Origin: Monocercomonoides exilis PA203
Lineage: Eukaryota > Protista > Preaxostyla
DNA length: 64,000 nt
Direction of reading: 5' to 3'
Assembly: GCA_001643675.2 (NCBI GenBank)
Contig: LSRY02000004.1
Location: 2,239,459-2,303,458 of the forward strand
The translations under genes were made by a program, and so were the position numbers. This document shows, piece by piece, positions 46,801-63,700 of this stretch (positions within the stretch are counted from its first letter, which is position 1; each line of letters starts with the position of its first letter). The notes beneath the pieces are model-generated. The model was given only the letters and a program-made list of their open reading frames with translations, was not told the origin of the DNA and ran no database searches.

Positions 46801-47000
46801 AAACAGAAAATATTTTTTTTCTCACCAAGGGTTGGTCTGACAATGATATGAGTTATCTTCATCTTCTAGTCTACCAAATGTGAATCCCATAGAAAATTTT
46901 CCTTATAATACGACAACTATCCCTCTAGTTATATATTTGAAGTTATCCCCTTTGTAACTTCCATGACGCTCTGACCATTTGTTTCTTCTTTTCTCATAAA

Positions 47001-47121
47001 GATAACTGGCTTGTGGCAGCCAAGCGTTCATAGCGACGTTGCTTTTTGATTCTTCGATGTCGGCTCTTCCTATCATTGCGAAGCAGAATTCGCCAAGTGT
47101 TGGATTGTTCACCCACTAACA

Positions 47122-47159
<38 letters not shown>

Positions 47160-47750
47160 TAGTTTTACCCTACTGATTAAGTATAGTATTGTCAAGATGG
47201 TAATTCTAGTAAGTATGAGAGGAACCCTAGAATCGTATAATTGGCATTTGCGGTTAGTTGAGAAACTAGTGCCGCGAAGCTACCATACGTTAGATTATGA
47301 CTGAACGCCTCTAAGTCAGAATCTATTCCAGATTTTTATAATTAAGACAATTGAAGGATTATATTGATAATCTCCTGGGCATGCCTTTGTTAAAAAGGGA
47401 ATAGTATTTGATAAAAATAGAGATATGGAAATTAAGACCATGGCCATCGAGGATATTTGACAACCCTCCTATCTACGGTCGGCGACGATTGGATAAGGGA
47501 AGATCCTGTAATGGGATGTGTGTAAATGGGGTCGTATCTTCTAGATGTTTGCTGTAGAATAACATATATGACTAGAATATATTGTGATGGGTCTTGTATC
47601 TCCTTTAAATGCCTTGTGGATCGAAGTTGGTATATAGACTGAGATTCTATATTATACTGCTTTGCAAGGGAGTAAATTTTAAGGAAATTGAGATATTTTA
47701 TTTCCAAGTCGAGGATCTTGAAGGATTGGTTGTACCGCCTTTGAAAGATT
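47001..47750 (+). rRNA. 28S (LSU) rRNA 3' fragment, 5'-truncated; 3' end approximate
   Basis: Conserved eukaryotic domain V/VI blocks: GATAACTGGCTTGTGGCAGCCAAGCGTTCATAGCGAC, TTCGATGTCGGCTCTTCCTATCATTG, GGGAACGTGAGCTGGGTTTAGACCGTC, a sarcin-ricin loop region, and TGACTGAACGCCTCTAAGTCAGAA. Upstream of 47001 the sequence is not rRNA. Confidence 0.93.
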
Positions 47751-48289
47751 TGGCCGGAACGGTTGGTCCAATAAAAACATTTGGTAGATGTATTTAAACG
47801 GATTTCATTAGTTTGGAATTAAACGTTTCATCTGCTGGACCATTTTTTTGCCTGGCTATTGTAAAGATAAATGAGAATATTGGTAAAGGGGTCATGCCTG
47901 AGAAGGACGGATTAGACGAATCCTTGTTATCAGAGGGCTGTGCGTCTCAGAGTGTTTTGTTTGCACGATTTACTGAGGCTTAACTCTGAATATTGTCCGA
48001 TATTTTTTTTTTTTGATTAAGTCATTGAATAAAAAAAAGTCCGTCTAATTAATTAACCCCACAAGAAAATGTTTTAAAATTCATAGATATTCTCTTTTCA
48101 GCTTGAAAACGTATGAATGATTGAATATAAAAACATTGAAAAAAACTTTAAGGACGGATGATTGGAAAGCCTTAATAATACCATGGATGAAGTACTACCC
48201 CCCAAAATAACTGTTCTTTTTTTTTTGGGAAAAGAAAAAATAAATGGGAATTTGAGGGAATCCAATGTGGGAAAAAGTCATAAAGGATG

Positions 48290-48785
48290 AAACTTTTTTT
48301 GAGTTAAATATTAATGATTTCAAAAAAATAAGTTTCTATTCTTCCTTTAAAGGAGTAAAAAGAAACATCTTCAAAAAGATAATGATATTAATCAAACAGA
48401 TTAAGTCAAAACTTTTTTGAAGTTATTAGAGTCAAAAAATAGACCCAAGTCAAATGAAAAATTGGGTTGTAATTGACCAAAAGTTAAAAATGTTTCTGAC
48501 TCCAATAGATGAGTGGAGAGGAACTTCTTCAATGGTTTCAATGTAATGATATTAATCAAATAGATCCTCCATTTTGGTTAATATTCATTGTAAAACTTTG
48601 AAGTTTTTTTGACTTTAAGAAAAAAGTTTCTATCCTCTCTTAAAGGAGATAAAAGAAACATCTTCAAAGATGATGAAAGTGCGTGTATATCATGTTTATC
48701 ATGGTTGCACATTGCTTAAGTCATGATGACTTTGAAGTATTTTTTGACTCAAAAATTGATAATTTCAAAAAAAGTTTCTAACTCC
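48290..48785. repeat. Modular AT-rich direct repeats downstream of 28S
   Basis: AAGTTTCTAT..TAAAGGAG..AAAAGAAACATCTTCAAA at ~48330 and ~48624; TAATGATATTAATCAAA at ~48380 and ~48544; several AACTTT(TT)GAAGT..TTT variants. Confidence 0.75.
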
Positions 48786-51189
48786 AAAAAATAGAAAAGA
48801 GAGGGGGAAAATTGGAAATAGAAGGAAACAGCCTCGAGGGGTGGGGGCCGCGCGACAAACGCGGTAAAAGGGCGGGGAGCGAAAGTTACCGAACTTTTGC
48901 CGTGTGGCGCGTCGGCCATTGGGTGGGACTCTTTCCAATCAGAAAAGGCCTTTATTTTCTTCAAAATAACACCACCAAATTGTTCCTCTTGCAATGTACA
49001 AATTTGAGGGTTTTCAAATTTTCATTGAAAATTTTTGCCCTTCTCCCCTAAAATTATTAATAGAATTAATTCTGACCTTTAAAATTTTTAACTCTTTTTC
49101 TTCTATTTTTCGCGAGATGGATGAATATCTGCGCGCAGGAATGATGTGCGCAGATTTCATCCAGCGAGCGCTACCGGAGAAGTAGCGCGAGATTGTTATT
49201 CATAACCTCGCGGTTAGCGAGAAAATTTTGAAAAACAATCAAAAAAAGAGGTCATTTTCAATGAAGAAAATCGACATTTTTGTGTTATTTATTTAATGAA
49301 ATGAATGAAACTTTCCCTGATAAAATATCATTTTTACTACTTTAAATTATTTATCTTTTGATATAATTTTTATTAAAATCTGATATGTATTCCTCATGCT
49401 GTGATCATTTTTTATTTTTTTCAAACTTTATATTTTTTTTATAATTTTTTTCTATTTTTTTATTTTTGATGAAAATTGGATGAAAGATGTATGATATGAT
49501 AACATTAATTGTGATGATATTATTGTAAGAATATTGTTCGTTGTGGTTGAATAATAATGAAAAATAACATTCTGAAATATCAACAAAAATAAGATACTTT
49601 TTTGTTTGCTCAGAACCAACCATCAACATCAAAGTTCTTATATATTATTATCATCTATATTATATCTATTATATTATATATTTTTTCCATCCAACTTTCC
49701 TCATTATTTGAGAAGTTAAATTTTTTTTATTTTTTAAATATTTTTTTATCTCAATAACTGACTTTTTCTTTCCATTGAAAAAATTCATATATAATGTTAC
49801 AATGATATAGTATATTATATATTTTTTTGATGTTAGTCTGTCCACCAAATTTGGAGATAAAAAAATATTTTCATTTTTTCCCTCTTTTTTCGAACAAAAA
49901 TTAATTTTTTTAATTTTTTGTAACTTTCAATTCATCTCAACTTTTTTATCAAATGAATAGTAATCAAGTAATACATCTCTATTATTTTTATTTTTAAAGT
50001 TGAACAACATTTCATTTTTTTATAATTTTTTTTCCAAAATTTTCAATCTTAATTAATATTTTTCTATTTATTCCATGGATAGATAAATTTGAAAATAATA
50101 TTTTATATAGGTTATGAGGGGTGGGGAATGTGTTGGTGTATAGGGAGATTGGTATCAAACTGTTTTTGAGAAGTCGAATTCTTAACATAGAAAAATGGTT
50201 TTGATCTAGATCAAACATTTTTTTCAAAAAAATATTTTTTTCATAAGAAGTAGGAATTAGTGGTTGATGAAAAGTTACGTATATGGGAAATATTATGAGA
50301 GGAATTGATTGGTATTAAAATCAGAAATTAATCGATTCAAATTGTGGAATGATACGTTAATTAAAATTTTTTCAGTCAAAATTTTCGAAATTATTTTTTA
50401 AATATCTCGACAAATAAATTTTTCTAAGCCGTAAGACTTTACTAGAGTGTTAGTTGAACCATTTGTGAATTTTTGAAGTCATGGTCAAATTTTCGAAAAA
50501 TGCGAAATTTTGATTTTTTCTGATTAAGTTGAATTTAGCTCAAGTTAATCAGAAAAAATGAAAAGTTGGTGAAAATCGATTTTTATGAAAGTTGTGATCG
50601 AAACTTATGAAAACACAAAAAGTTCGGATAATTCGCGAATAGTCCGCTGAATTTTTTTCTCGGGCCAGATTGGTCTGGTTAGTGAGAAAATGTGATATGA
50701 AGATTTTGACTGAAAAAGTGGTGATCTTAGATCAAGGACCGAAAAATATGGGGTCTCAGATTCCTTTGATAATTGGCAGGTGGCAAGGACGTGGGCCCCT
50801 TATAAACATACTCGAATCTAAATTTTTTCTACCGAGCGGTTGTGGCTGGGCAGTGCGGACAAGTTGGTGATTTTGACTGAAAAAATGAAAAAAATTTTTT
50901 TTCTCGAAAATTTCAAAGTGGATATAAAATGTGATTCCATGGATGTATATGCATTGTAATGTTGTATATTGGTGATTTTTGGTTGGATACACTCATTTGT
51001 AGTTTTTGAGTTATAATCGAATTTTTGAGTGAAAATGGTCATTTTTGAGGTAAATCGAGTATAACTCGAGAAGTAATGGCCAGATAAATTTGATATTAAT
51101 ATATGATAAATGTGCATATAGTGCAGTAATAGCATGCGTATGGGTGTTGGTGGCGGGGGTCTGGCAGGCTGTCCAGAAAAGAAATAAAA

Positions 51190-54100
51190 AATTTGAAGGT
51201 GACTGGGGGTGCCTTGTTAGTGAAGTCACAGAGAGTGAACCAGGGGCAAGTGGCTGAATCGAAACACATATGACCGGCACAGTAACCCATGCCCGGATGT
51301 GGCCAAACGGCGTTTCGATCGGCCCAGTGGTTGCTGAGAAATCCGAGCGGCTAGTTGTTTTGAGTTCGGTTCTGATTTTTCACATAGAAAAGTGACTGGG
51401 GGGTATTGACTTGGCGATGCTGTGGAGAGTGAAGGGAGGGCAAGTAATCGGAATTAGAGGGATATGTTGGGGAATGTTAGTGGGGGTAGGATGTGGTGTA
51501 ATTGCTAAGAGATTAGTCCAGTGATTGCCAAGTAACCATGTCAGCAATATATTTTTTCTATGAAAATTGTTTTTTTTCTATGATAATTTTTCTATGTGAT
51601 CTTGACTGCCCGACCTCGAAGTGCCATCTTTTTCGAAAAACTCACAGACTCAATTTGAGTTTGACTGAAAAAGGAGTTGAGTGGAAGGTATCTCTGGAAG
51701 GGCTGATGGGCAGGGCTGGCAAAGGCCACAGGGCAAGGAGCGAGTGAGGCGGGCTATGTGCTGGGCCTATGGCTGGGCAGGCCCTGTGGCTTGGCCTGGA
51801 TCTATTGGACATATACTGTATTTCCCCAGTCAGAAAAAGTGACTGAGGGTTCAATGTTCCGGTGGTTATAGAAACTCAGGTGTTGGAGCCAGAGCTCCAG
51901 AAACAAAAGTGACAGTGTGCGCACAGACTGTGGCTGCACGCTGGGCAGGGTGCTGCTGGGCGCCTGTGGATCCTTCTGGCTGGGTGGGTCAGACACTCAC
52001 TTTTTTCACTAGGAAAACAGACTGGAAGACCATCTTCATTGAGCTGTATCTTTTTATCGGTCATAACTTACAGCTTGGCTGATGTGGGCAGAGTGGGCGT
52101 GTGGGCAGTGGCTACAAGGCTGGGTGGTGGGAGTGTGGCTGGGCTGGCTGGCTGGGCGGTGGTGTGAGCAAAAGTGAGTGAAAAATGACTGGGCCAGCCA
52201 TTGAGGTACCCCCTCTCTTTCAACGAACCTATCTCCTCAGGTGTTGGAGGGAGAGCTCCAGAAACAAAAGTGACGGTGCAGCGGGGGACCAGGGCTGTGC
52301 AGTGGGCGGGGTCTGGTTTGTGGGCTGTGGGCCGGGCCGGCTGGGTGGGCTGTGCACTGGGTTTTGTTCTGTCACTTTCATTGAAAAAACCTCAAATATG
52401 GTAAAAGACCCCGGGTGCCCAGACCCGAAAATCCATCTTTTTCGAAAAACTCATAGACTCAATTACACTACACTGAGGTTTCCTCGATTTTTGTGACTTT
52501 TGATACTAGAAATACACTATGAAAATGGGGTGTCTGCAAAACCTGCTTTGATACTAAAAAAAGGGAAAATTACACTACGCCGAGGTTTTCGTTGTGTAGT
52601 GTAATAAGGATGATTTTTATACTAGAAATTTGAGCTCCTAGGAAAAGTGACCAAATTACACTACACTTCGAAAACCTCGGCGTAGTGTATTTCGAGGTTT
52701 TTGATACTAGAAAATTTTGTCTATGAAATTTCTCTATGAAAAATACACTGTGTACCCCTCATGTTCACAGACTCATAGCGCCTCAGGGGCAAGTCAGCGA
52801 AACTTCTCGTTGCCATAGAGGGTCTCGCTGCACACTCGCTCTACACAATGGTGGTAATCTCATTCGGCTCAGTTGGATTGCCCTGAAGATACAGGGCAAA
52901 TACTCATATCGTTCCTATGAAAAACCCTTTCTCAATGATATTTTATGCAATGGACCCTGTATATTCCATGGGTCATAGGGAATCACCTGTAAGAGCTGGA
53001 AAGTTCTAGATGCCATAGGGCAAGTAGCTGTGCTCTTCGAGTATCCAATGGTAGTAATGTCTTTGCCCTCGGTCCATGTGCCTTTTCACTGTACTCAATA
53101 TACTGACATCTTTGAATGAAAATAGTTCATTTTTGATAGGGGACCCCTTATGTTCCCACTCTCATATCTTTTGATCGGTCATAACTTACAGACATGCCAA
53201 TGGTGCTGTGGCGTGGGCATGCCCTGCAGGTACAATGTGGCACACATTCGGCTGGTGGGCTGTGGCTCGGCTGAGGGCAGTGCCAGAAAAAGTGAGTATT
53301 TTGCATTGACTTTTTGAGTGACTTGGACCCCCCTCATTGGCTGGCCAGTAGCGAATCACACAGGAATCTGGGAAAGTTCTCGATGCCATAGGGAAACTCG
53401 CTCCACACTTGCTCTATCCATTGGTGCTATCGCCATTCACACTGCTCAACTTCCCTTATATCTATGGTCGATATACTAGTATCCTTCCTATGAAAAACTC
53501 CTTTTCAATGAAAATTTATACTAGGACCCCCTTATGTTTGTTGGAACGTAGCTCCACAGGGATAAGAGCTGGAAAGTTCTAAATGTTATAGAGGGTCTAG
53601 CTGCACACTGTGCCTAGCCAATGGCAGTATTCCCACTGGGCTCCTATGTAATGCCCTGCCACCACACTCAATATACTACTATCTTTCCTATCAAAAATAC
53701 ACTTACAATATATTGACTGGGACCCTTTATGTTCCAACCCTTGTAGTTCCTCAGGCTTGAGAGTGCGAGACTCGAAAATGTTATAGAGGGTCTAGCTATG
53801 CTCTCCCTCTATCCAACTGTGCTACTGGTATTCCTATTACTCTATGTGCCTTGGAGCCATAGGCAAAATACATGAACTTTTCATAGAAAAAGTGACTGAC
53901 CTCCACTGTGTTCCAACTCTCATATCTTTTTACTGGTCATAACTTACAGCCAACCTGATATCGCTGCAATGTGCCCACATACTGTGCCTGCAATGTGGCA
54001 CACATCCAGTGTCTATGCCCTGCCTGTGTATTTCACTACAGGGTCTACACTCACTTTTCATAGGGAAAGTTGACTCAGACCCCCTTGTGTTCCAGCCCTT

Positions 54101-54600
54101 GTAGCTTGCCAGGCTTAAGAGCTGGAAAGTTCTAAATGCCATAGAGGGTCTAGCTGCTCACTCACTCTATCCAACTATCCAACTACTTTTCCCACCACTC
54201 TTATACCCTTTTCACTATACTCAATATACTAACATTTTTGAATGATTTTCCACTTTTTCATATAAGACCCTCCAATGTTATTGACCTTGTAACTTTTTAT
54301 CGGTCATAACTCACAGGCTAGCTGATGGTATGAGTTTGTGCGTATGCTCTGCCGCTACGCTCCCATAGGCATTCCACTCCACTCCTCTGGCCACTCCAGC
54401 GGCGGTGTGAGAAAAAGTGAGTTTTGATAGGGGCATTTGCTATGGAAACATTGAAGTGGGCATAGCGGGCCAGGCTTAAGAGCTGGAAGGCTGGAACAAA
54501 AAACCAGATGAAAGGCAGTGAGGGCATACACAAGGTGGTGTGGTAGTGGCAAGGCTTTGGTGTGTCCCCATCCCAAGAAACACTATGGAAGGATACTAAA
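51190..54600. repeat. Diverged ~190-bp monomer array in the IGS
   Basis: A GACCC(C)..ATGTTCC-like anchor recurs at ~52753, 52952, 53140, 53325, 53524, 53719, 53897, 54078 and 54266. AAGAGCTGGAAAGTTCT.ATG..ATAG and GGTCATAACTTACAG submotifs recur. Related (AAAGT)GACTG motifs continue to the left as far as ~51200. Confidence 0.8.
52401..52735. repeat. Left arm of a ~330-bp inverted repeat with TTACACTAC and TGATACTAG iterons
   Basis: Colinear with the reverse complement of 54595-54931, for example CCATCTTTT..AAAAACTCATAGACTCAATTACACTAC and CCTGCTTTGATACTAAAAAA. Confidence 0.88.
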
Positions 54601-54931
54601 AAATTTCATTGAGTTTTTTTGTAGTATCATTTTTGGGCATTTTCACTAGGCCGAGGTTTTCGCGGCGTAGTGTATTTGGGGCACTTTTGATACTAGCCGA
54701 TATTTTCTAGTATCAAAATCATCTTTATTACACTACGCCGAGGTTTTCGGGGCGTAGTGTAATTTTGAGATTTTTTAGTATCAAAGCAGGGTTTTCGATG
54801 AGCTCGTTTTCGTAGTGTAATTCTAGTATGAAAAAGGGAAAAAAACACGAAAACCTGGGCGTAGTGTAATTGAGTCTATGAGTTTTTTGGAAAAGATGGT
54901 GTTTGTGGTGCGGGCTGTCGGGGATTTTTAC
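54595..54931. repeat. Right arm of the ~330-bp inverted repeat
   Basis: GTAGTGTAATTGAGTCTATGAGTTTTTTGGAAAAGATGG and TTTTTTAGTATCAAAGCAGG are reverse complements of left-arm blocks, in inverted order. Confidence 0.88.
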
Positions 54932-56487
54932 GGAAGTATACTTAGGGGGACACCCCCCGAAAAAATTTTTTTTCTGACTTCATTTTTTTTCGACAAAAGT
55001 TGTCTGGTGAGGATAGTCTGAGCCAGGGCTTATGTGATATGGGGTTAGTATAGAAGTGTGACTTGTATATGAAACTCCATAGGAAAAATAGTGGATTTTG
55101 ATAGAAAATTTTTGTGTAGGGGGCTGTCTATTAGACTGAGGCATTGTGTAATAGTGGTCTATTGTATATATATGTATATAGTATTATGTCATATGTATAG
55201 CAAATAGGTGAGTAGGCTTTTAATGTTAAGGAAGATAGTATATGGTATTTGAATGGGAATAATATGTATATGTCTCTTTGAATGAAATACCTTTGCATGA
55301 TTATACAGAAACTCACAGAGTGTGAAGTATAAATGAAGGTGGTTCAAAAAGGGTGGGTTTGTTAGGTCTGATTGGAATGAAAAGCAACATGTGATTGTAT
55401 ATAAGGGCATCACAATACATGTTTTATGAAAGCATCTTCTGGTAGCAATGGCTGATCAGATGGGTCGAATAATAAAGTGAGTTGTTTTGAATCTTTGAGT
55501 CTGATGTGTAAAAATGTCAGATGAAGAGGTGAAGATGATTCTAATAAAATCGATGTGTCTGAGAAGTTGTTGTGAGAGAGTGCTATGCTAGTAGTGAATG
55601 TGTAATGTGAGGCAGTATAGTATATGGTTATGTGGAGTGAAGTAGTTTGAGTTGGAACATGATGAATCCATGTTGGAGAACTTCTTGATTTTAGAAAAGC
55701 AATAATGTGGGGATTTGTGTGAAAGTGTTTGGGGTGTTTTTGTTCTTGGAAATACATGTATGTTGACTTGTTTGAATATTGTAGAAAAGAGTACTTCATG
55801 AAGTCGAGACCTTGTCTATATGTATGGTGTGGTCGATATGTATATGTGTATATCATTGATTGAGTTCAGATGGATTGTTATTGCACATTGGAACTATTGG
55901 GTTTGGTTGCCTAATATGTGGGGGTTGGATTTGACTATCGAGAGATAGAATGTGACAATGATGAAATCAAAATGAACAAATATATATTATTGTTTGTTTG
56001 TTTGAAGACATAAATGTCATGTTTCTATTGATTGAAAGTATTTGAACTGTTACAATTATTTGCCACTTTTTCAAAAGGTGAAAATATAATTGTAAGATGC
56101 GAATGAAAAATCATATTGTAATGATCTATCAGAGCTTTTTATATTATCTTCTTTTTGATGATGATGAGAAAAGTGTTTTGATATTGAGATTACATTGTGA
56201 TAATACAAATATTAATGATTATGATTGGATGACTTAAGAACTGACATTAATCAGTTATTAAGTTTATCTGAAAGAAAATAATGTGTTAATATTTGAGAAG
56301 GGAAAATATTGTGTCTATTCTTGAAATATCATCAATCTTTGTGAATGGTGATGTTTTAATAATTATGACTAAAATACTATATTATGTTGTCTTTAACAAA
56401 ACAATATGATATATATTATTTTATATTAGAAAAAAACATTAGTTGAATGAAATATTTAGTTAATGTTTTTTATTCTATATATAAATG

Positions 56488-58011
56488 TATCTGGTCGATT
56501 CTGCCAGTAGTCATATGCTTGTCTCAAAGATTAAGCCATGCATGTGTCAGTATAAATAACTTGTATTTATGAAACTGCGAATGGCTCATTACAACAGTTA
56601 TAATTTATTTGACAATGACAATGTTATATTTTGAATAGAAATATAATTTACTACATGGATAGCCGTAGTAATTCTAGAGCTAATACATGCGAGAATTCAT
56701 TTTTCTTTTTGTTTTTCGGAATGGAAAGAAGGGTGGGTTTGAAAAAGATCCGACTAAGGGTGTTTCAGCAATGAGACACCCTTTGGGGAAGGATTGTATT
56801 TATTAGATCGAAAACCATTAGGAATAGTTTAAATGTTTGATTCTATATGGATCAAAAACTTATTTCGGCACATGTTTGAAGCCTCGTCAGGGGTGTAATG
56901 ATATGTGTCCATTGTGAAAGATAATGGTGATTCATGATAAATGTCGAATTGCCAGGGTGGGTTAAGAGCCCATCGTCTTGGCAATGTGTCATTGAAATTT
57001 CTGACCTATCAACTGATGATGGTAGGATAGAGGCCTACCATGGTATTGACGGGTAACGGAGAATTAGGGTTCGATTCCGGAGAGGGAGCCTGAGAGATGG
57101 CTACCACTTCCAAGGAAGGCAGCAGGCGCGCAAATTACCCAATCCCAATCAATGACGTATATGGGGAGGTAGTGACAAAAAATAACAAAGCGGGGTATCT
57201 AATGGTATTCTGCTATTGGAATGGTTTCAATGTAAATGCTTGAAAGAGAAACAATTAGAGGGCAAGTCTGGTGCCAGCAGCCGCGGTAATTCCAGCTCTA
57301 ATAGTGTATACTAAAATTGCTGCAGTTAAAAAGCTCGTAGTTGGATTTTGGAGTTTTTAATTGTTCGAGGGGGCGAGATGTTTCTCTATACTTAGTCCTG
57401 CTTCATTTTTCTTATTAAATTAGCTTTCGGGTTGATTTAATTTGGAAGTGAAGTGATTGGAGGGTATTAATGAGGGGATATTTGAAAATCATGGTATTGT
57501 TTTTGATCTTGCATCAAGATTTATTTCTTGGTGTTTGATTGATTCAGTATCTTTCATTTATCTTATGCTTGCCTTGAATTTGAATAACCTCGAATCCCTT
57601 TTTGGAGAAGTCCTTGTGGCTTTTTCAAAAAAGGGGTAAATGTTTTCGAAATTATTAATATATCACTTAAATGTTGATTTATATTAATCGTTTCTCTTTG
57701 TCAAAGAAGAGGAAAATTTCGGAGAGTTTACTTTGAAGAAAATGGAGTGTTCAAAGCAGGCGTTTTTTTGTAATGAAAGAAATTCGCTACTGAACACATT
57801 AGCATGGAATAATAAAATAAGACACCTGATGTGTTTTAAATTTGATAATGAGAAAAATATAAGGAAACTTATTTATTTTTTTGTTATCAAACACATTCGA
57901 GTCTTAAACAAAATGAAAGAGGGATTTATTTCTCTTTTGTTTTGTTTATCGATTTGAGTTTTATTGGTTTTTGAAACAGGTGTAATGATTAAGAGGGACA
58001 GTTGGGGGGCA
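56488..58011 (+). rRNA. 18S (SSU) rRNA 5' portion with long AT-rich expansion segments, 3'-truncated
   Basis: Starts TATCTGGTCGATTCTGCCAGTAGTCATATGCTTGTCTCAAAGATTAAGCCATGCATG. Contains GGCAAGTCTGGTGCCAGCAGCCGCGGTAATTCCAGCTC and TTAAAAAGCTCGTAGTTG. Similarity stops after ATGATTAAGAGGGACAGTTGGGGGGCA. No 3' half, ITS or 5.8S follows. Confidence 0.95.
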
Positions 58012-58114
58012 AGTTCCAAGTATTTGGACCATCGATAAAAAATTTTTTACATATTTATAACGAAACAAAATGGAATATTAATTAATTTAAAATAAGTTAT
58101 TTTTGTCGAAAAAG

Positions 58115-58197
58115 TGTTTTTAACAATTTTCAATTTTTCTTTTGATCTGTCCCATAACATTTGCTTGTTTTATAAAGGTTTGAAAAATTGGTTTATT
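58115..58197. repeat. Proximal copy of an ~83-bp inverted repeat (partner 60701-60783)
   Basis: TGTTTTTAACAATTTTCAATTTTTCTTTTGATCTGTCCCATAAC...AGGTTTGAAAAATTGGTTTATT matches the reverse complement of 60701-60783 with few substitutions. Confidence 0.9.
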
Positions 58198-58276
58198 TTA
58201 CGAAATTAACACTCTTCGAACTTTGATGTTGTTTGTTTTGAATTAAAATCGATAGTCCTTTTTATGGCTTTAATAG

Positions 58277-58690
58277 TTGAACGATGAATCCGCTCTGCAA
58301 ATTAACAGCATTGTTCATTTGAATCGGGCATCAATAGATAATTACAGAGAAATTAAGAAGAAATGTGTTTATGCATTGAGAAAAGCAACAGAAAGCAGAG
58401 CTGAGAAAGCTGAAGACTTTTTGCGAAATGGAGCAATTGACGCAGTTTTGGAAGAGATTGAGCGACAAGCGTTGAAGGAGAAAATTGTACAAGTATACTC
58501 GTAATTTTTGTGTTCGTTGCAAGAAGATTGAAAGGAAAGAAGAGAGATGAAACGGAAGAAGTGAAAAGAAAGACATCCAAAAAGAAGACATGTGATGGAT
58601 GGAAGAATAAAAAAACGAAGATTGCGTCATCTGGTTGCTCCATTTCATTGGTCGAGAATTATTTGGAAATTCTAATTTGATAAAGAATTA
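58277..58690 (+). pseudogene. 3' fragment of the KMEEEGYED-family gene, disrupted
   Basis: DNYREIKKKCVYALRKA..EDFLRNGAIDAVLEEIERQAL aligns with 43490-43620. It is followed by stops or frameshifts and lacks the N-terminal two-thirds. Confidence 0.8.
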
Positions 58691-59149
58691 TTCAGATTTC
58701 TTTTTCTATATTTCTAAATTTAATAAATAAATATACACTCCATCTTTTGATATTTCCATTTTATTATTATTCGTGTTAAAGGCATATTCACTCGAGAAAT
58801 AAAAGAACTGTGATTTGCAAAATAGATGAAAGTGTTTTCTCAAAAAATATCAAGAATTATTATGAAAAATGAACATTTGAAATAAAGGAATCTTTTAAAA
58901 AAAGAAATGAAAAAAAATCGATAGAGAAAGAATCAATCCTATCGTAATTTTCTGTTTTATGGAGAAAAGAAAAAAATTACTACTTTAAAAAAGCAATCAA
59001 ATGAAAGAAAAACTCTTACAATTCAAAAAAATTCTGGGCTTTCAAAACTGAAACTTTTTGAGGAAAATAACGGAGTATAAAAAACGCTGGTTTGTAATTT
59101 CATACTTCATCAGATATTTGAGTTACAAAGTGAAATTCCTCTTTCTTCT

Positions 59150-60655
59150 TTAGATATTCACAAAATAATCGGAAATATTCAATAACAATACACAAAAATA
59201 TTTTTCTTTGAAAAAAAATACAGTTTCATTGAAAGTTGTGATGATATCTTCGTATCCTTCTTCTTCCATCTTTTCAAAAACCTTCCTTTTCGTTGACTTT
59301 CTTTCCTCTTCTTCCTTATCATCTTCCTTCTTTTCTTTCAATCGTCTTGAAACATTCGTAAAGAATTGCAAGCAATGAAACATCAAATTGAAATTTAATG
59401 TTGACTGCTGTATCTCCTCCAAATGGTGTCCAATAGTTCCGCTTTTCAAAAAGTTATAAGTTTTCACATCTTAATTTTTTGCTGCTGCTTGAAATACATA
59501 TACACATTCTCTGCGAATCCCTCTGCGATCATCCCCTTTTGCTGCTCGATGAACCTGGACAATGTTTTTGATCGGCACCACATTTTCTTCATTCTTCAAT
59601 CAGCAACTGGGAAAATAAATCACGACTGTAGCAACCCATCTCTTCAATGAAAGCTCTTCGTTCGTTTCTCTTCCTCTTCTTCTTTTTCCATTTTCTTCTT
59701 CTTTTCTATTCCAATCGATGCATTTCATCAGCTCTTCCAATTCCCTTCTCACCTCTCTCGCTAAATGCAGCTCATTCACAATAACTTCTTCCAAGCTGTT
59801 GAAAAACCAAAATCGGTTAATCAAAATCTTCCAAGCAGACTGATAGTCCAGATGAGTAAGATTTCTGTGTTTCTGCTGATGTTCGATGATTTCTAACATT
59901 TCCTTCAAATATTGTTCTTGTTTCAGATTCTATCAAAAATAAAGGGGAAAAAAGCAAACATAATAAAAATGAAATAACAATGTTCATACAAAAACTCCTA
60001 TTTCGCACAAAGCCAGCAAGGCAATTTCCACTTCTTTTTGTGTCTCCTCGTTTTCCTCTCTGCTCAATGAAGCTTTCAGAAGGTACGGAACACAGGTTGA
60101 AATCAATTTCAAAGGTGGAACTCCGCTGTGAAACATAAGATAACATTCGCAGAAGTCAATAAGAAGATGATTGTTATCTTTTTCCTTTTTTTCTTCTTCA
60201 ATAATCATCTTATGCAATCTTTTGCCCAGAGAAGATCTTTTTAAAAATAGATTCCATACATTTTTCAGCTTGATGCAACATCCAATGCGCTTCAGCAAAT
60301 AAAAAGCATTTTCCATTTACATTTTCATTTATTCAATCATTTTTTCTATTTTGTTGAATGTTTCTTCGTTGAAAATTGATTTGAATTCTTCTTTATTCAT
60401 TCCATTAACTATTTCATTCATTTCTTCAATTTTCTGCTTCTGTTCTGCTTCAGAGAATTGTTCCAACTGTGAAAGTTTCACTAAAAAAGTGAAAAAATCT
60501 AAAAAGAAAAAAGAAGCATTTATTATTCAAACCAACTATTTCTAATAACATTTCACAAACCCAGAAACGTTTGTGTTTTTGAAGGTGACTGTGAAATCGC
60601 AAAATGATTTCAACAGCGTAGAAATATCTTTTTTCGAATCACGAAAAATTGGCAT
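59150..60655 (-). pseudogene. Near full-length KMEEEGYED-family pseudogene with four in-frame stops
   Basis: Paralogous to 42435-43868 with the same intron position. In-frame stops: TAA 60329-60331, TAA 60317-60319, TGA 59600-59602, TAA 59471-59473. Confidence 0.85.
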
Positions 60656-60700
60656 ATAACTAAAATCAAATGGTTTTTGACAAAATCCTCACAAACAACG

Positions 60701-60783
60701 AATAAACCAATTTTTCAAACCTGAATAAAACAAGAAAAAGTTATGGGACAGATCAAAAGAAAAATGGAAAATTGTTAAAAACA
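60701..60783. repeat. Distal copy of the inverted repeat, abutting the telomere
   Basis: Reverse complement of 58115-58197. Similarity ends exactly where the telomeric sequence begins. Confidence 0.9.
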
Positions 60784-63700
60784 AACTAGGTTAGGGTTAG
60801 GGTTAGGGTTAGGGTTAGGGTTAGGGTTAGGGTTAGGGTTAGGGTTAGGGTTAGGTTAGGGTTAGGTTAGGGTTAGGGTTAGGGTTAGGGTTAGGGTTAG
60901 GGTTAGGGTTAGGTTAGGGTTAGGGTTAGGGTTAGGGTTAGGGTTAGGGTTAGGGTTAGGGTTAGGGTTAGGGTTAGGGTTAGGGTTAGGGTTAGGGTTA
61001 GGGTTAGGGTTAGGGTTAGGTTAGGTTAGGGTTAGGGTTAGGGTTAGGGTTAGGTTAGGGTTAGGGTTAGGGTTAGGGTTAGGGTTAGGGTTAGGGTTAG
61101 GGTTAGGGTTAGGGTTAGGGTTAGGGTTAGGGTTAGGGTTAGGGTTAGGGTTAGGGTTAGGGTTAGGGTTAGGGTTAGGGTTAGGGTTAGGGTTAGGGTT
61201 AGGGTTAGGGTTAGGTTAGGGTTAGGGTTCAAACTAGGTTAGGTTCAAACTAGGTTTAGGGTTAGGGTTAGGGTTAGGGTTAGGGTTAGGGTTAGGGTTA
61301 GGGTTAGGGTTAGGGTTAGGGTTAGGGTTAGGGTTAGGGTTAGGGGTTAGGGTTAGGGTTAGGGTTAGGGTTAGGGTTAGGGTTAGGGTTAGGGTTAGGG
61401 TTAGGGTTAGGGTTAGGGTTAGGGTTAGGGTTAGGGTTAGGGTTAGGGTTAGGGTTAGGGTTAGGGTTAGGGTTAGGGTTAGGGTTAGGGTTAGGGTTAG
61501 GGTTAGGGTTAGGGTTAGGGTTAGGGTTAGGGTTAGGGTTAGGGTTAGGGTTAGGGTTAGGGTTAGGGTTAGGGTTAGGGTTAGGGTTAGGGTTAGGGTT
61601 AGGGTTAGGGTTAGGGTTAGGGTTAGGTTAGGGTTAGGGTTAGGGTTAGGGTTAGGGTTAGGGTTAGGGTTAGGGTTAGGGTTAGGGTTAGGGTTAGGGT
61701 TAGGGTTAGGGTTAGGGTTAGGGTTAGGGTTAGGGTTAGGGTTAGGGTTAGGGTTAGGGTTAGGGTTAGGGTTAGGGTTAGGGTTAGGGTTAGGGTTAGG
61801 GTTAGGGTTAGGGTTAGGGTTAGGGTTAGGGTTAGGGTTAGGGTTAGGGTTAGGGTTAGGGTTAGGGTTAGGGTTAGGGTTAGGGTTAGGGTTAGGGTTA
61901 GGGTTAGGGTTCAAACTAGGTTAGGGGTTAGGGTTAGGGTTAGGGTTAGGGTTAGGGTTAGGGTTAGGGTTAGGGTTAGGGTTAGGGTTAGGTTAGGGTT
62001 AGGGTTAGGGTTAGGGTTAGGGTTAGGGTTAGGGTTAGGTTAGGGTTAGGGTTAGGGTTAGGGTTAGGGTTAGGGTTAGGGTTAGGGTTAGGGTTAGGGT
62101 TAGGGTTAGGGTTAGGGTTAGGGTTAGGGTTAGGGTTAGGGTTAGGGTTAGGGTTAGGGTTAGGGTTAGGGTTAGGGTTAGGGTTAGGGGTTAGGGTTAG
62201 GGTTAGGGTTCAGACTAGGTTAGGGTTAGGGTTAGGGTTAGGGTTAGGGTTAGGGTTAGGGTTAGGGTTAGGGTTAGGGTTAGGGTTAGGGTTAGGGTTA
62301 GGGTTAGGGTTAGGGTTAGGGTTAGGGTTAGGGTTAGGGTTAGGGTTAGGGTTAGGGTTAGGGTTAGGGTTAGGGTTAGGGTTAGGGTTAGGGTTAGGGT
62401 TAGGGTTAGGGTTAGGGTTAGGGTTAGGGTTAGGGTTAGGGTTAGGGTTAGGGTTAGGGTTAGGGTTAGGGTTAGGGTTAGGGTTAGGGTTAGGTTAGGG
62501 TTAGGGTTAGGGTTAGGGTTAGGGTTAGGTTAGGGTTAGGGTTAGGGTTAGGGTTAGGGTTAGGGTTAGGGTTAGGGTTAGGGTTAGGGGTTAGGGTTAG
62601 GGTTAGGGTTAGGGTTAGGGTTAGGGTTAGGGTTAGGGTTAGGGTTAGGGTTAGGGTTAGGGTTAGGGTTAGGGTTAGGGTTAGGGTTAGGGTTAGGGTT
62701 AGGGTTAGGGTTAGGGTTAGGGTTAGGGTTAGGGTTAGGGTTAGGGTTAGGGTTAGGGTTAGGGTTAGGGTTAGGGTTAGGGTTAGGGTTAGGGTTAGGG
62801 TTAGGGTTAGGGTTAGGGTTGGGGTTAGGGGTTAGGGTTAGGGTTAGGGTTAGGGTTAGGGTTAGGGTTAGGGTTAGGGTTAGGGTTAGGGTTAGGGTTA
62901 GGGTTAGGGTTAGGGTTAGGGTTAGGGTTAGGGTTAGGGTTAGGGTTAGGGTTAGGGTTAGGGTTAGGGTTAGGGTTAGGGTTAGGGTTAGGGTTAGGGT
63001 TAGGGTTAGGGTTAGGGTTAGGGTTAGGGTTAGGGTTAGGGTTAGGGTTAGGGTTAGGGTTAGGGTTAGGGTTAGGGTTAGGGTTAGGGTTAGGTTAGGG
63101 TTAGGGTTAGGGTTAGGGTTAGGGTTAGGGTTAGGGTTAGGGTTAGGGTTAGGGTTAGGGTTAGGGTTAGGGTTAGGGTTAGGGTTAGGGTTAGGGTTAG
63201 GGTTAGGGTTAGGGTTGGGGTTGGGGTTAGGGTTAGGGTTAGGGTTAGGGTTAGGGTTAGGGTTAGGGTTAGGGTTAGGGTTAGGGTTAGGGTTAGGGTT
63301 AGGGTTTAGGGTTAGGTTAGGGTTAGGGTTAGGGTTAGGGTTAGGGTTAGGGTTGGGAGGTTAGGGTTAGGGTTAGGTTAGGGTTAGGGTTAGGGTTAGG
63401 GTTAGGGTTAGGGTTAGGGTTAGGTTAGGGTTAGGGTTAGGTTCAAGCTAGGTTAGGGTTAGGGGTTAGGGTTAGGGTTAGGTTAGGGTTAGGGTTAGGG
63501 TTGGGGTTAGGTTAGGGTTAGGGTTAGGGTTAGGGTTAGGGTTAGGGTTAGGGTTAGGGTAGGGTTGGGGTTGGTTAGGGTAGGTTGGGTTAGGGTTAGG
63601 GTTAGGGTTAGGGTTAGGGTTAGGGTTAGGGTTAGGGTTAGGGTTAGGGTTAGGTTAGGGTTGGGAGTTGGGGTTAGGGTTGGGGTTAGGGTTAGGGTTA

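What the first reader, a model, noticed from the sequence alone, without database searches (positions are those of the whole stretch)
52401..54931. 2.5-kb IGS cassette bounded by ~330-bp inverted arms carrying 35-bp loxP/FRT-like sites
Seen: four 35-bp sites with inverted arms and an asymmetric core: 52570-52604 TTACACTACGCCGAGGTTTTCGTTGTGTAGTGTAA, 52656-52690 TTACACTACACTTCGAAAACCTCGGCGTAGTGTAT, 54641-54675, and 54728-54762 TTACACTACGCC-GAGGTTTTCGG-GGCGTAGTGTAA (perfect 12-bp arms, 11-bp core). Half-sites (~52462, ~54848) and interleaved TGATACTAG iterons also occur. Known: inverted arms around an asymmetric spacer of this overall size is the architecture of tyrosine-recombinase sites (loxP and FRT, 34 bp), and inverted FRT-bearing repeats drive yeast 2-micron plasmid inversion and amplification. 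Inference: this could be an invertible or amplification-promoting module in the rDNA spacer. Alternatives are a non-autonomous long-TIR transposon or binding arrays for a dimeric Pol I or replication factor. I found no recombinase gene in the window and no target-site duplication.
Basis: partly seen in the sequence, partly recalled or inferred. Interest (0 to 1): 0.8.

Follow-up and report, generated by a model that had tools for sequence, protein, structure and literature searches.

The report
Palindrome clusters flanking rDNA spacer repeats
The inverted arms and their 35-base palindromes are real, but they are a fixed, selectively conserved part of the ribosomal DNA spacer of the protist Monocercomonoides exilis, most likely protein-binding sites next to the rRNA promoter, not a flippable or mobile cassette.

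Summary
Two ~330-bp arms (52401-52735, 54595-54931; about 77% alike, inverted) carry four 35-bp palindromes, two half-sites and interleaved TGATACTAG motifs.

The genome is the Monocercomonoides exilis ONT assembly. The window is a chromosome end with a truncated rDNA unit.

The cassette occurs in 25 distinct spacer copies. In 24 of them both arms and both flanks could be read, and all 24 have the order flank-arm-middle-arm-flank in one orientation. All three arm motifs are almost exclusive to rDNA spacers (the 35-bp pattern 44 sites against 0 for the control; the 22-mer 122 against 1; the B motif 93 against 3).

There is no target-site duplication and no copy outside rDNA. The "cargo" subrepeats also lie outside the left arm.

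Among copies the 9-bp half-sites are about 8 times less variable than the rest of the arms, while the asymmetric core is not clearly constrained.

The right arm ends 10 bp before an initiator-like box, GTATACTTAGGGGGAC, which occurs once per spacer and is identical in 22 of 24 copies. There the base composition shifts to that of the transcribed spacer.

Best reading: arrays of binding sites for a dimeric factor upstream of the Pol I promoter, duplicated long ago in inverse orientation around enhancer-like subrepeats. A recombinase switch is not supported. Interest is modest.

The parts
52401..52735 (+). Left arm: cluster of C box, A sites and B motifs, inverted relative to the right arm
   Evidence: 77% complementary to 54595-54931. 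94-98% identical among 25 copies.
54595..54931 (+). Right arm: the same motif cluster, ending 10 bp before the initiator-like box
   Evidence: Residues 54595-54727 are missing in 8 copies, where sites 3 and 4 are fused.
52570..52604 (.). 35-bp palindromic site 1 (core GAGGTTTTCG on the + strand)
   Evidence: It has perfect 12-bp arms in 7 of 25 copies; in this window the right arm reads TGTGTAGTGTAA.
52656..52690 (.). 35-bp site 2 (core CGAAAACCTC on the + strand)
   Evidence: identical in 21 of 25 copies.
54641..54675 (.). 35-bp site 3, degenerate left half (TTTCACTAGGCC)
   Evidence: It is fused with site 4 by an 87-bp deletion in 8 copies.
54728..54762 (.). 35-bp site 4: perfect 12-bp arms, 11-bp core; about 200 bp upstream of the initiator-like box
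   Evidence: as single-stranded DNA it folds at -13 kcal/mol, z = -9.3.
52463..52484 (+). Half-site (22-mer unit), degenerate in most copies
   Evidence: the majority of copies read CTTTACTACACT.
54847..54871 (-). Half-site (22-mer unit, reverse orientation)
   Evidence: (I9, 96% complementary to 52568-52592).
52433..52462 (+). C box CCATCTTTTTCGAAAAACTCATAGACTCAA (left arm, outer end)
   Evidence: 75 matches in the genome against 0 for the control, all listed ones at rDNA spacer loci or spacer relics. Diversity among copies 0.009.
54870..54899 (-). C box, right-arm copy, about 45 bp upstream of the initiator-like box
51624..51655 (+). Third, solitary C box copy, with no A sites after it
   Evidence: (D13, I3).
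52736..54594 (+). Middle: about five degenerate subrepeats (periods of about 200, 370 and 570 bp), each with an ATAGRGGG initiator-like motif on the + strand. Its length varies between copies.
   Evidence: (D1-D9). Related subrepeats also lie left of the left arm, at 52003-52321.
54937..54957 (+). Candidate Pol I initiator GTATACTTAGGGGGACACCCC
   Evidence: 24 genome matches, one per spacer, 22 of them exact. The composition shift starts here. It resembles the published plant and arthropod start-site motifs. The start site has not been mapped.

Best explanation
The two arms are rDNA-specific clusters of protein-binding sites that belong to the regulatory part of the M. exilis rDNA intergenic spacer.

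Each arm holds repeats of a composite module: a 35-bp palindrome (two inverted 9-12-bp half-sites TTACACTAC(GCC) around GAGGTTTTCG), flanked at 11-12 bp by TGATACTAG motifs, plus a 30-bp C box at the outer end.

The right arm sits at about -15 to -350 from the likely Pol I start (GTATACTTAGGGGGAC at 54937). I infer that a dimeric sequence-specific factor binds there, as an upstream promoter element and/or a promoter-proximal terminator or fork barrier of the T0/Reb1/TTF-I kind.

The left arm is an ancient inverted duplicate of the same module, about 2.2 kb upstream. Together the arms bracket a block of enhancer-like subrepeats that carry initiator-like motifs.

Shown: the anatomy, exclusivity to rDNA, fixed orientation, and selective conservation of the motifs.
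Inferred: the start site, the protein binding, and the regulatory role.
For: 1. Context. The cassette lies in the spacer between the LSU and SSU genes, and its right end is 1.56 kb upstream of the SSU gene.

2. Exclusive to rDNA. The 35-bp pattern has 44 sites against 0 for the control; the 22-mer 122 against 1; the B 14-mer 93 against 3; the C box 75 against 0. All listed places are at spacer loci, apart from one B-motif match.

3. Purifying selection. Diversity among 24-25 copies is 0.009 for the 9-mers, 0.009 for the C box and 0.03 for B, against 0.073 for the rest of the arms (Mann-Whitney p = 2e-7). The difference survives removal of homopolymer and CpG columns (p = 2e-4). Between the two old arms, motif columns are 93% identical against 71% elsewhere (p = 9e-5).

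4. Regular spacing. B lies 11-12 bases from the palindrome on 7 of 8 sides (coordinates).

5. Promoter proximity. An initiator-like box starts 10 bp beyond the right arm, occurs once per spacer and is identical in 22 of 24 copies. The C-poor composition typical of the transcribed spacer starts at about 54500-54900. From the arm onward, copy-to-copy identity is mostly 94-98% against 92-94% in the middle.

6. ATAGRRRR motifs number 20 on the + strand against 9.5 expected, and 10 of them lie in the middle of the cassette. This is what spacer-promoter or enhancer repeats look like.

7. Precedent. A 28-bp palindrome lies 88 bp upstream of the putative spacer promoters in the stick-insect IGS repeats (PMC2590618).
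Against: No transcription start has been mapped and no binding protein is known. The initiator assignment rests on resemblance and composition.

Known Pol I terminator and barrier sites (Sal box, Reb1) are asymmetric, whereas these sites are palindromic. None of these motifs occurs downstream of the LSU gene, where primary terminators would be expected.

An inverted, rather than direct, duplicate of a promoter-upstream module is unusual for spacers.

The copies share ancestry and undergo concerted evolution, so the conservation statistics overstate independence. This is a nanopore assembly, so some variation may be sequencing error.
Confidence: 0.55

Rival explanations
1. Neutral relic: an old inverted duplication within a mosaic spacer, with no present function. 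The short motifs look conserved only because palindromes and repeated motifs are kept alike by gene conversion or hairpin-templated repair.
For: The arms are 23% diverged. The first half-site is degenerate in most copies, and site 3 is lost in 8 copies, including the whole tandem array on C79. The core of the site 1 / site 4 pair has flipped relative to its flanks, which shows conversion or template switching among sites.
Against: The 9-mer and C box are about 8 times less variable than neighbouring arm sequence, across copies and between arms. The C box is not a palindrome-paired element, yet it is equally conserved. The spacing between B and the palindrome is regular.
Confidence: 0.15
2. An ancient non-autonomous foldback or long-TIR DNA transposon that landed in the ancestral rDNA unit and was spread by concerted evolution. 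The repeated 12-mers would be subterminal transposase-binding sites, as in CACTA, Mutator or foldback elements.
For: The arms are long and inverted, and they are built of short motifs in both orientations. DNA transposons are abundant in this genome (PMC8767320).
Against: There is no target-site duplication. Arm similarity fades gradually past 52401 and 54931 rather than ending at a sharp terminus. No copy of the arms or of any of the three motifs was found outside rDNA spacers. Subrepeats of the supposed cargo also lie outside the left arm, at 52003-52321. No spacer copy shows an empty site.
Confidence: 0.1
3. Replication element: the palindromes extrude as cruciforms or bind an initiator or fork-barrier protein, marking the rDNA origin or a bidirectional replication fork barrier.
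For: The sites have strong hairpin potential (-10 to -13 kcal/mol, z = -4.5 to -9.3 for three of the four). Their palindromic symmetry would suit an orientation-independent barrier. In other eukaryotes, rDNA origins and fork barriers lie in this part of the spacer (established knowledge).
Against: No direct evidence. Site 2 folds weakly (z = -2.2). This reading overlaps the best explanation and cannot be separated from it by sequence.
Confidence: 0.1
4. Site-specific recombination module: a tyrosine or serine recombinase acts on the 35-bp sites to invert or excise the middle, or to promote rDNA amplification.
For: The sites have inverted arms around an asymmetric core. Sites 2 and 3/4 are mutually inverted, so inversion is geometrically possible. 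The genome holds at least 98 Phage_integrase-domain matches, and earlier notes report recombinase-Myb elements at chromosome ends. In 8 copies an 87-bp deletion joins sites 3 and 4 at or near the core.
Against: 0 of 24 fully readable copies are inverted. The arms are not homogenised. The core is 11 bp (17 bp between the invariant 9-mers), against 6-8 bp for known tyrosine-recombinase sites, and it is not clearly constrained. No recombinase lies in the rDNA unit or the window. The 87-bp deletion is equally explained by slippage between 35-bp direct repeats, and the C19 deletion is mediated by microhomology.
Confidence: 0.05

Closest known systems
Repeated enhancer and spacer-promoter blocks of rDNA intergenic spacers (Xenopus 60/81-bp repeats, mouse 140-bp repeats, plant and insect spacer promoters; stick-insect Bag530 repeats with a 28-bp palindrome upstream of each putative spacer promoter, PMC2590618)
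   Same: They lie upstream of the rRNA start and are species-specific. Their subrepeats vary in number between units and carry start-site-like motifs. Palindromes are proposed to be sites for dimeric factors.
   Different: Here the motif clusters form two inversely oriented arms around the subrepeats, rather than direct repeats. The motifs have no sequence similarity to any described one. The function is untested.
Promoter-proximal Pol I terminator and fork-barrier sites (mouse T0 Sal box with TTF-I, yeast Reb1 site, Xenopus T3, fission-yeast Sap1/Reb1 Ter sites)
   Same: Short protein-binding sites about 100-300 bp upstream of the start, reiterated in the spacer.
   Different: Those sites are asymmetric and polar, and they also occur downstream of the LSU gene. 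These are palindromic and absent downstream of the LSU gene. No Myb-type consensus is recognisable. The comparison rests on my own knowledge of those systems.
loxP / FRT and the yeast 2-micron inverted repeats
   Same: About 34-35 bp, with 12-13-bp inverted arms and an asymmetric centre; long inverted repeats flanking a segment.
   Different: The centre is 11 bp, not 8 bp. The long arms are 77% identical, not identical. No cognate recombinase is nearby, and no second orientation was seen in 24 fully readable copies.
Foldback, CACTA or Mutator-type elements with long terminal inverted repeats made of subterminal motifs
   Same: Arms of about 330 bp built from short motifs in both orientations.
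   Different: No target-site duplication, no sharp termini, no copies outside rDNA, no transposase, and the cargo-like repeats continue outside the arm.

Membership tests
Tyrosine-recombinase target site (lox/FRT type) | Two inverted recombinase-binding elements of about 11-13 bp | tested here: met
   Perfect 12-bp arms at 54728-54762, with the outer 9 bp nearly invariant.
Tyrosine-recombinase target site (lox/FRT type) | Asymmetric crossover spacer of 6-8 bp, kept identical between partner sites | tested here: not met
   The spacer is 11 bp (17 bp between the invariant 9-mers). Core diversity is 0.03-0.056 against 0.07 for background, so it is not clearly constrained.
Tyrosine-recombinase target site (lox/FRT type) | Cognate recombinase encoded with or next to the sites | tested here: not met
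   None of the 98 scored PF00589 matches lies in the window or at an rDNA spacer locus. No Pfam match was found in ORFs between the SSU relic and the telomere. Recombinase genes do exist elsewhere in the genome.
Tyrosine-recombinase target site (lox/FRT type) | Recombination products: both orientations, or precise excision | tested here: not met
   24 of 24 fully readable copies are collinear. The only site-to-site deletion (87 bp, sites 3 and 4) is ambiguous. Rare events in the raw reads cannot be tested here.
2-micron-like inverted-repeat amplification system | Long inverted repeats kept identical by frequent recombination | tested here: not met
   The arms are 76.6-78.8% identical, with indels.
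Terminal-inverted-repeat DNA transposon / MITE | Target-site duplication flanking sharp termini | tested here: not met
   The flanks CAAATATG and GGAAGTAT are unrelated. Weak inverted similarity continues beyond the arms.
Terminal-inverted-repeat DNA transposon / MITE | Copies at unrelated genomic sites | tested here: not met
   All matches to the 2.9-kb query and to the motifs lie at rDNA spacer loci, apart from one B-motif match. The genome search gives lower bounds.
rDNA spacer regulatory repeats | Located in the spacer upstream of the Pol I start, present in every unit, restricted to rDNA | tested here: met
   The start site itself is inferred.
rDNA spacer regulatory repeats | Sequence constraint on the motifs | tested here: met
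rDNA spacer regulatory repeats | Binding of a Pol I, termination or replication factor, and an effect on transcription or replication | not testable with these tools
   This needs EMSA, ChIP or reporter assays.

The most novel reading that the evidence does not exclude
The palindrome, B-motif and C-box arrays could be the recombination- or fork-stalling centre of the M. exilis rDNA: a barrier plus a divergent non-coding promoter (functionally like yeast RFB/E-pro), or a target of one of the genome's many element-borne tyrosine recombinases. Such a centre would drive copy-number change and the seeding of rDNA units onto more than 20 chromosome ends.
Probability: 0.07. Interest if true: 0.7.

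Novelty: new member of a known kind. Interest (0 to 1): 0.3.

Why it matters
I found no description of the rDNA spacer of any oxymonad, and the M. exilis genome paper does not mention rDNA at all.

This report gives a first map of the spacer: a candidate Pol I start, enhancer-like subrepeats, and three selectively conserved, rDNA-only motifs. These motifs could serve as bait to find Pol I or replication factors in a deep-branching, mitochondrion-less eukaryote.

It also removes a false lead: this is not a lox/FRT-like switch. As biology it is an ordinary kind of feature, species-specific spacer cis-elements, in an unexplored lineage.

Tried and rejected
- Inversion: I compared flanks, arms and middle in 25 loci and found no inverted middle in any of the 24 where both sides can be read.
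- Transposon: I looked for a target-site duplication, for extra-rDNA copies of the arms and of the three motifs, and for empty sites. None was found.
- Relatives in other organisms: two metagenome scans, one with the 21-mer and one with the 12+12 palindrome with a free core, found nothing. No other oxymonad genome is reachable here, so cross-species conservation is untested.
- Known RNA families in the cassette: none.
- Recombinase near the cassette: no Pfam match beyond chance in ORFs between the SSU relic and the telomere.
- Compensatory changes keeping the palindrome: none seen. Variation sits at the inner three positions of the arms, mostly CpG transitions.
- TAGGGGRMC as a window-wide motif: not enriched. 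That test is weakened because the shuffles include the telomere repeats.
Full report
**What and where**

The window's assembly has 82,301,135 bases in 101 contigs. This is exactly the size and contig count of the Monocercomonoides exilis PA203 nanopore assembly (PMC8767320). Earlier notes of this scan name the same organism.

The window is the right end of contig C36. From left to right it holds:
- an LSU rRNA 3' fragment at 46956-47491;
- a 9-kb intergenic spacer;
- the first part of the SSU gene from 56491, with weak SSU matches up to 57852;
- TTAGGG telomere repeats from 60789.

Homology to complete rDNA units runs from 46995 to 58008. A complete unit on the array contig C79 is 17.2 kb: an 8.55-kb spacer, a 3.0-kb SSU gene, the 5.8S gene and a 5.5-kb LSU gene.

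**Check of the observation**

The arms pair as inverted repeats over about 290-330 bp at 77% identity. TACACTAC occurs 10 times in the 64-kb window, only in the arms, against 0.28 expected.

**Anatomy**

Each arm is a cluster of three motifs.
- A: a 22-mer unit, TTACACTACGCC-GAGGTTTTCG, usually completed by an inverted 12-mer to give the 35-bp palindrome.
- B: TTTGATACTAGAAA.
- C: a 30-bp box, CCATCTTTTYCRAAAAACTCATAGACTCAA, at the outer end of each arm.

From the coordinates, a B motif lies 11-12 bases from the palindrome on 7 of 8 sides. The working unit therefore looks like B-12-A35-12-B, about 77 bp long.

The middle (52736-54594) is not unique cargo. It consists of about five degenerate subrepeats (families D1-D9). 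The same subrepeat family continues to the left of the left arm, at 52003-52321. A third, solitary C box lies at 51624-51655. The left arm therefore sits inside a mosaic of spacer repeats rather than at the edge of a discrete insert.

**Copies in the genome**

A 2.9-kb query finds the cassette at 25 distinct loci plus a few fragments.

In all 24 loci where both sides can be read, the order is left flank, left arm, middle, right arm, right flank on one strand. No inversion is present in the assembly. If flipping were frequent, independently assembled chromosome ends would be expected to differ.

Length differences are deletions or duplications among the subrepeats of the middle.
- Eight copies, including all four units of the array contig C79, lack 87 bp, so that sites 3 and 4 are fused. 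Slippage between the two direct 35-bp repeats explains this as well as site-specific excision does.
- A 160-bp deletion in the C19 copy lies between short direct repeats, GAAAA(T)TACACT.

**Restriction to rDNA**

| Motif | Matches in genome | Control |
|---|---|---|
| TTACACTAC-N15-19-GTAGTGTAA | 44 sites | 0 |
| 22-mer, up to 3 mismatches | 122 | 1 |
| B 14-mer | 93 | 3 |
| C box | 75 | 0 |

All listed places are at rDNA spacer loci, apart from one B-motif match. I found no target-site duplication. The inverted similarity fades gradually beyond 52401 and 54931 instead of stopping at a terminus.

**Selection**

Nucleotide diversity among the 24-25 copies, by column class within the arms:

| Columns | Diversity |
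|---|---|
| Outer 9-mers of the A sites | 0.009 |
| C box | 0.009 |
| B motif | 0.03 |
| Core | 0.03 |
| Rest of the arms | 0.073 |

Motif columns differ from the rest at Mann-Whitney p = 2e-7. The difference survives removal of homopolymer runs and CpG positions (p = 2e-4). After that removal the core (0.05) is no longer clearly below background.

Between the two old arms, A and B motif columns are 93% identical against 71% for other columns (p = 9e-5).

The constrained parts are thus two inverted half-sites with a looser spacer. That is the pattern of a dimeric DNA-binding protein. It is not the pattern expected if core identity between partner sites were what mattered.

Caveats: the copies are related and evolve in concert, and nanopore errors may inflate the background.

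**A curiosity**

Sites 1 and 4 are positional homologues in the inverted arms, yet both carry GAGGTTTTCG on the + strand. The core, or the whole palindrome, has therefore flipped relative to its flanks. Conversion from a neighbouring site or hairpin-templated switching would do this. An 11-bp segment is far too short to be inverted by a recombinase acting on its own arms.

**Relation to the promoter**

Ten bases beyond the right arm lies GTATACTTAGGGGGACACCCC. It occurs 24 times in the genome, once per spacer, and is identical in 22 copies. It resembles the Pol I start motifs quoted for plants (TATATAGGGG; PMC6589552) and for arthropods (TATA>TANGRRRR; PMC2590618).

The C-poor, G-skewed composition that runs up to the SSU gene begins at about 54500-54900. 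From the arm onward, copies are mostly 94-98% identical, against 92-94% in the middle and 82-90% further upstream.

ATAGRRRR occurs 20 times on the + strand of the spacer against 9.5 expected (0 of 300 shuffles reach 20). Ten of these lie in the cassette's middle, mostly in the conserved core of the subrepeats.

This is the familiar layout of spacer-promoter or enhancer repeats upstream of a gene promoter. It places the right arm at about -15 to -350. The weak inverted similarity beyond the arms also covers the initiator-like box (ATATTTGAGG, read on the other strand at about 52385), so the left arm may be an inverted, degenerate copy of the whole promoter-upstream module. The start site is inferred, not mapped.

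**Recombinases**

The genome has at least 98 matches to the Phage_integrase domain, many of them in open frames of 1,000-1,400 residues. Earlier notes describe recombinase-Myb elements at chromosome ends.

None of these lies in the rDNA unit or the window. ORFs between the SSU relic and the telomere have no meaningful Pfam match. A recombinase source exists in the cell, but nothing ties it to these sites.

**Verdict**

The structure is real, conserved and specific to rDNA, but it is a fixed part of the spacer. I read it as arrays of binding sites for a dimeric factor (and probably a second factor) at and upstream of the Pol I promoter, acting as an upstream element, a promoter-proximal terminator or a fork barrier. 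An ancient inverted duplicate brackets enhancer-like subrepeats (confidence about 0.55).

Rivals:
- a functionless relic, 0.15;
- an ancient foldback-type transposon fixed in the unit, 0.10;
- a replication element, 0.10;
- a recombinase switch, 0.05.

It is a new example of a known kind of feature in an unexplored lineage. The same stretch was flagged in other windows of this scan.

**Limits**

No raw reads, no transcript data and no related oxymonad genomes were reachable. Two metagenome scans and two look-ups for independent assemblies found nothing.

Noticed in passing
G000 contigs C2, C5, C6, C13, C14, C16, C17, C19, C20, C29, C36, C50, C54, C58, C61, C65, C69, C73, C89, C96, C97: Where the contig length or a low coordinate allows a check, every rDNA spacer copy lies within about 3-70 kb of a contig end, on more than 20 contig ends. 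The SSU side faces the nearest end, except on C19. C14 and C36 carry rDNA at both ends. The genome paper never mentions rDNA.
   Followed up: partly
L060 (G000:C2:1926000-1928000), position 1144: Spacer sequence homologous to window 50642-51791 runs directly into TTAGGG repeats. This looks like a chromosome end healed inside an rDNA spacer, upstream of the cassette.
   Followed up: partly
window 46995-58008 and 58009-60788: The rDNA unit here is a relic: only the last ~500 nt of the LSU gene and about the first 1.5 kb of the 3.0-kb SSU gene. It is followed by 2.8 kb of AT-rich sequence whose ORFs have no convincing Pfam match, then the telomere.
   Followed up: partly
window 52570-52604 vs 54728-54762: These are positional homologues in the inverted arms, yet both have the core GAGGTTTTCG on the + strand. 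The core has flipped relative to its flanks.
   Followed up: yes
L008-L014, L024 (C79 x4, C58, C16, C96, C17); window equivalent 54654-54740: An 87-bp deletion fuses sites 3 and 4 into one hybrid site in 8 copies, including all four units of the tandem-array contig C79. The relic in the window keeps the longer form.
   Followed up: yes
L057 (G000:C19:1330800-1333400): This is the only copy facing away from its contig end. It has a 160-bp deletion (window 52578-52737) between short direct repeats GAAAA(T)TACACT, and a rearranged piece of 51573-51800 beside it.
   Followed up: partly
G000, e.g. C20:1013002-1013478, C68:118120-118551, C2:1661124-1661600: At least 98 matches to the Phage_integrase domain, many within uninterrupted frames of 1,000-1,400 residues. 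These are presumably mobile-element recombinases.
   Followed up: no
window 52579-52581, 52593-52595 and the equivalent positions of the other sites: Variation among copies at the inner three positions of the 12-bp arms is mostly CG to TG or CA (GCC/ACC, GGC/GGT/TGT). This is the pattern of CpG decay.
   Followed up: no
L039:2616-5614 and L039:6139 to L033:1621 (C79): The rRNA genes are long: the SSU gene is about 3.0 kb and the LSU gene about 5.5 kb, so they carry large expansions. The unit is 17.2 kb.
   Followed up: no
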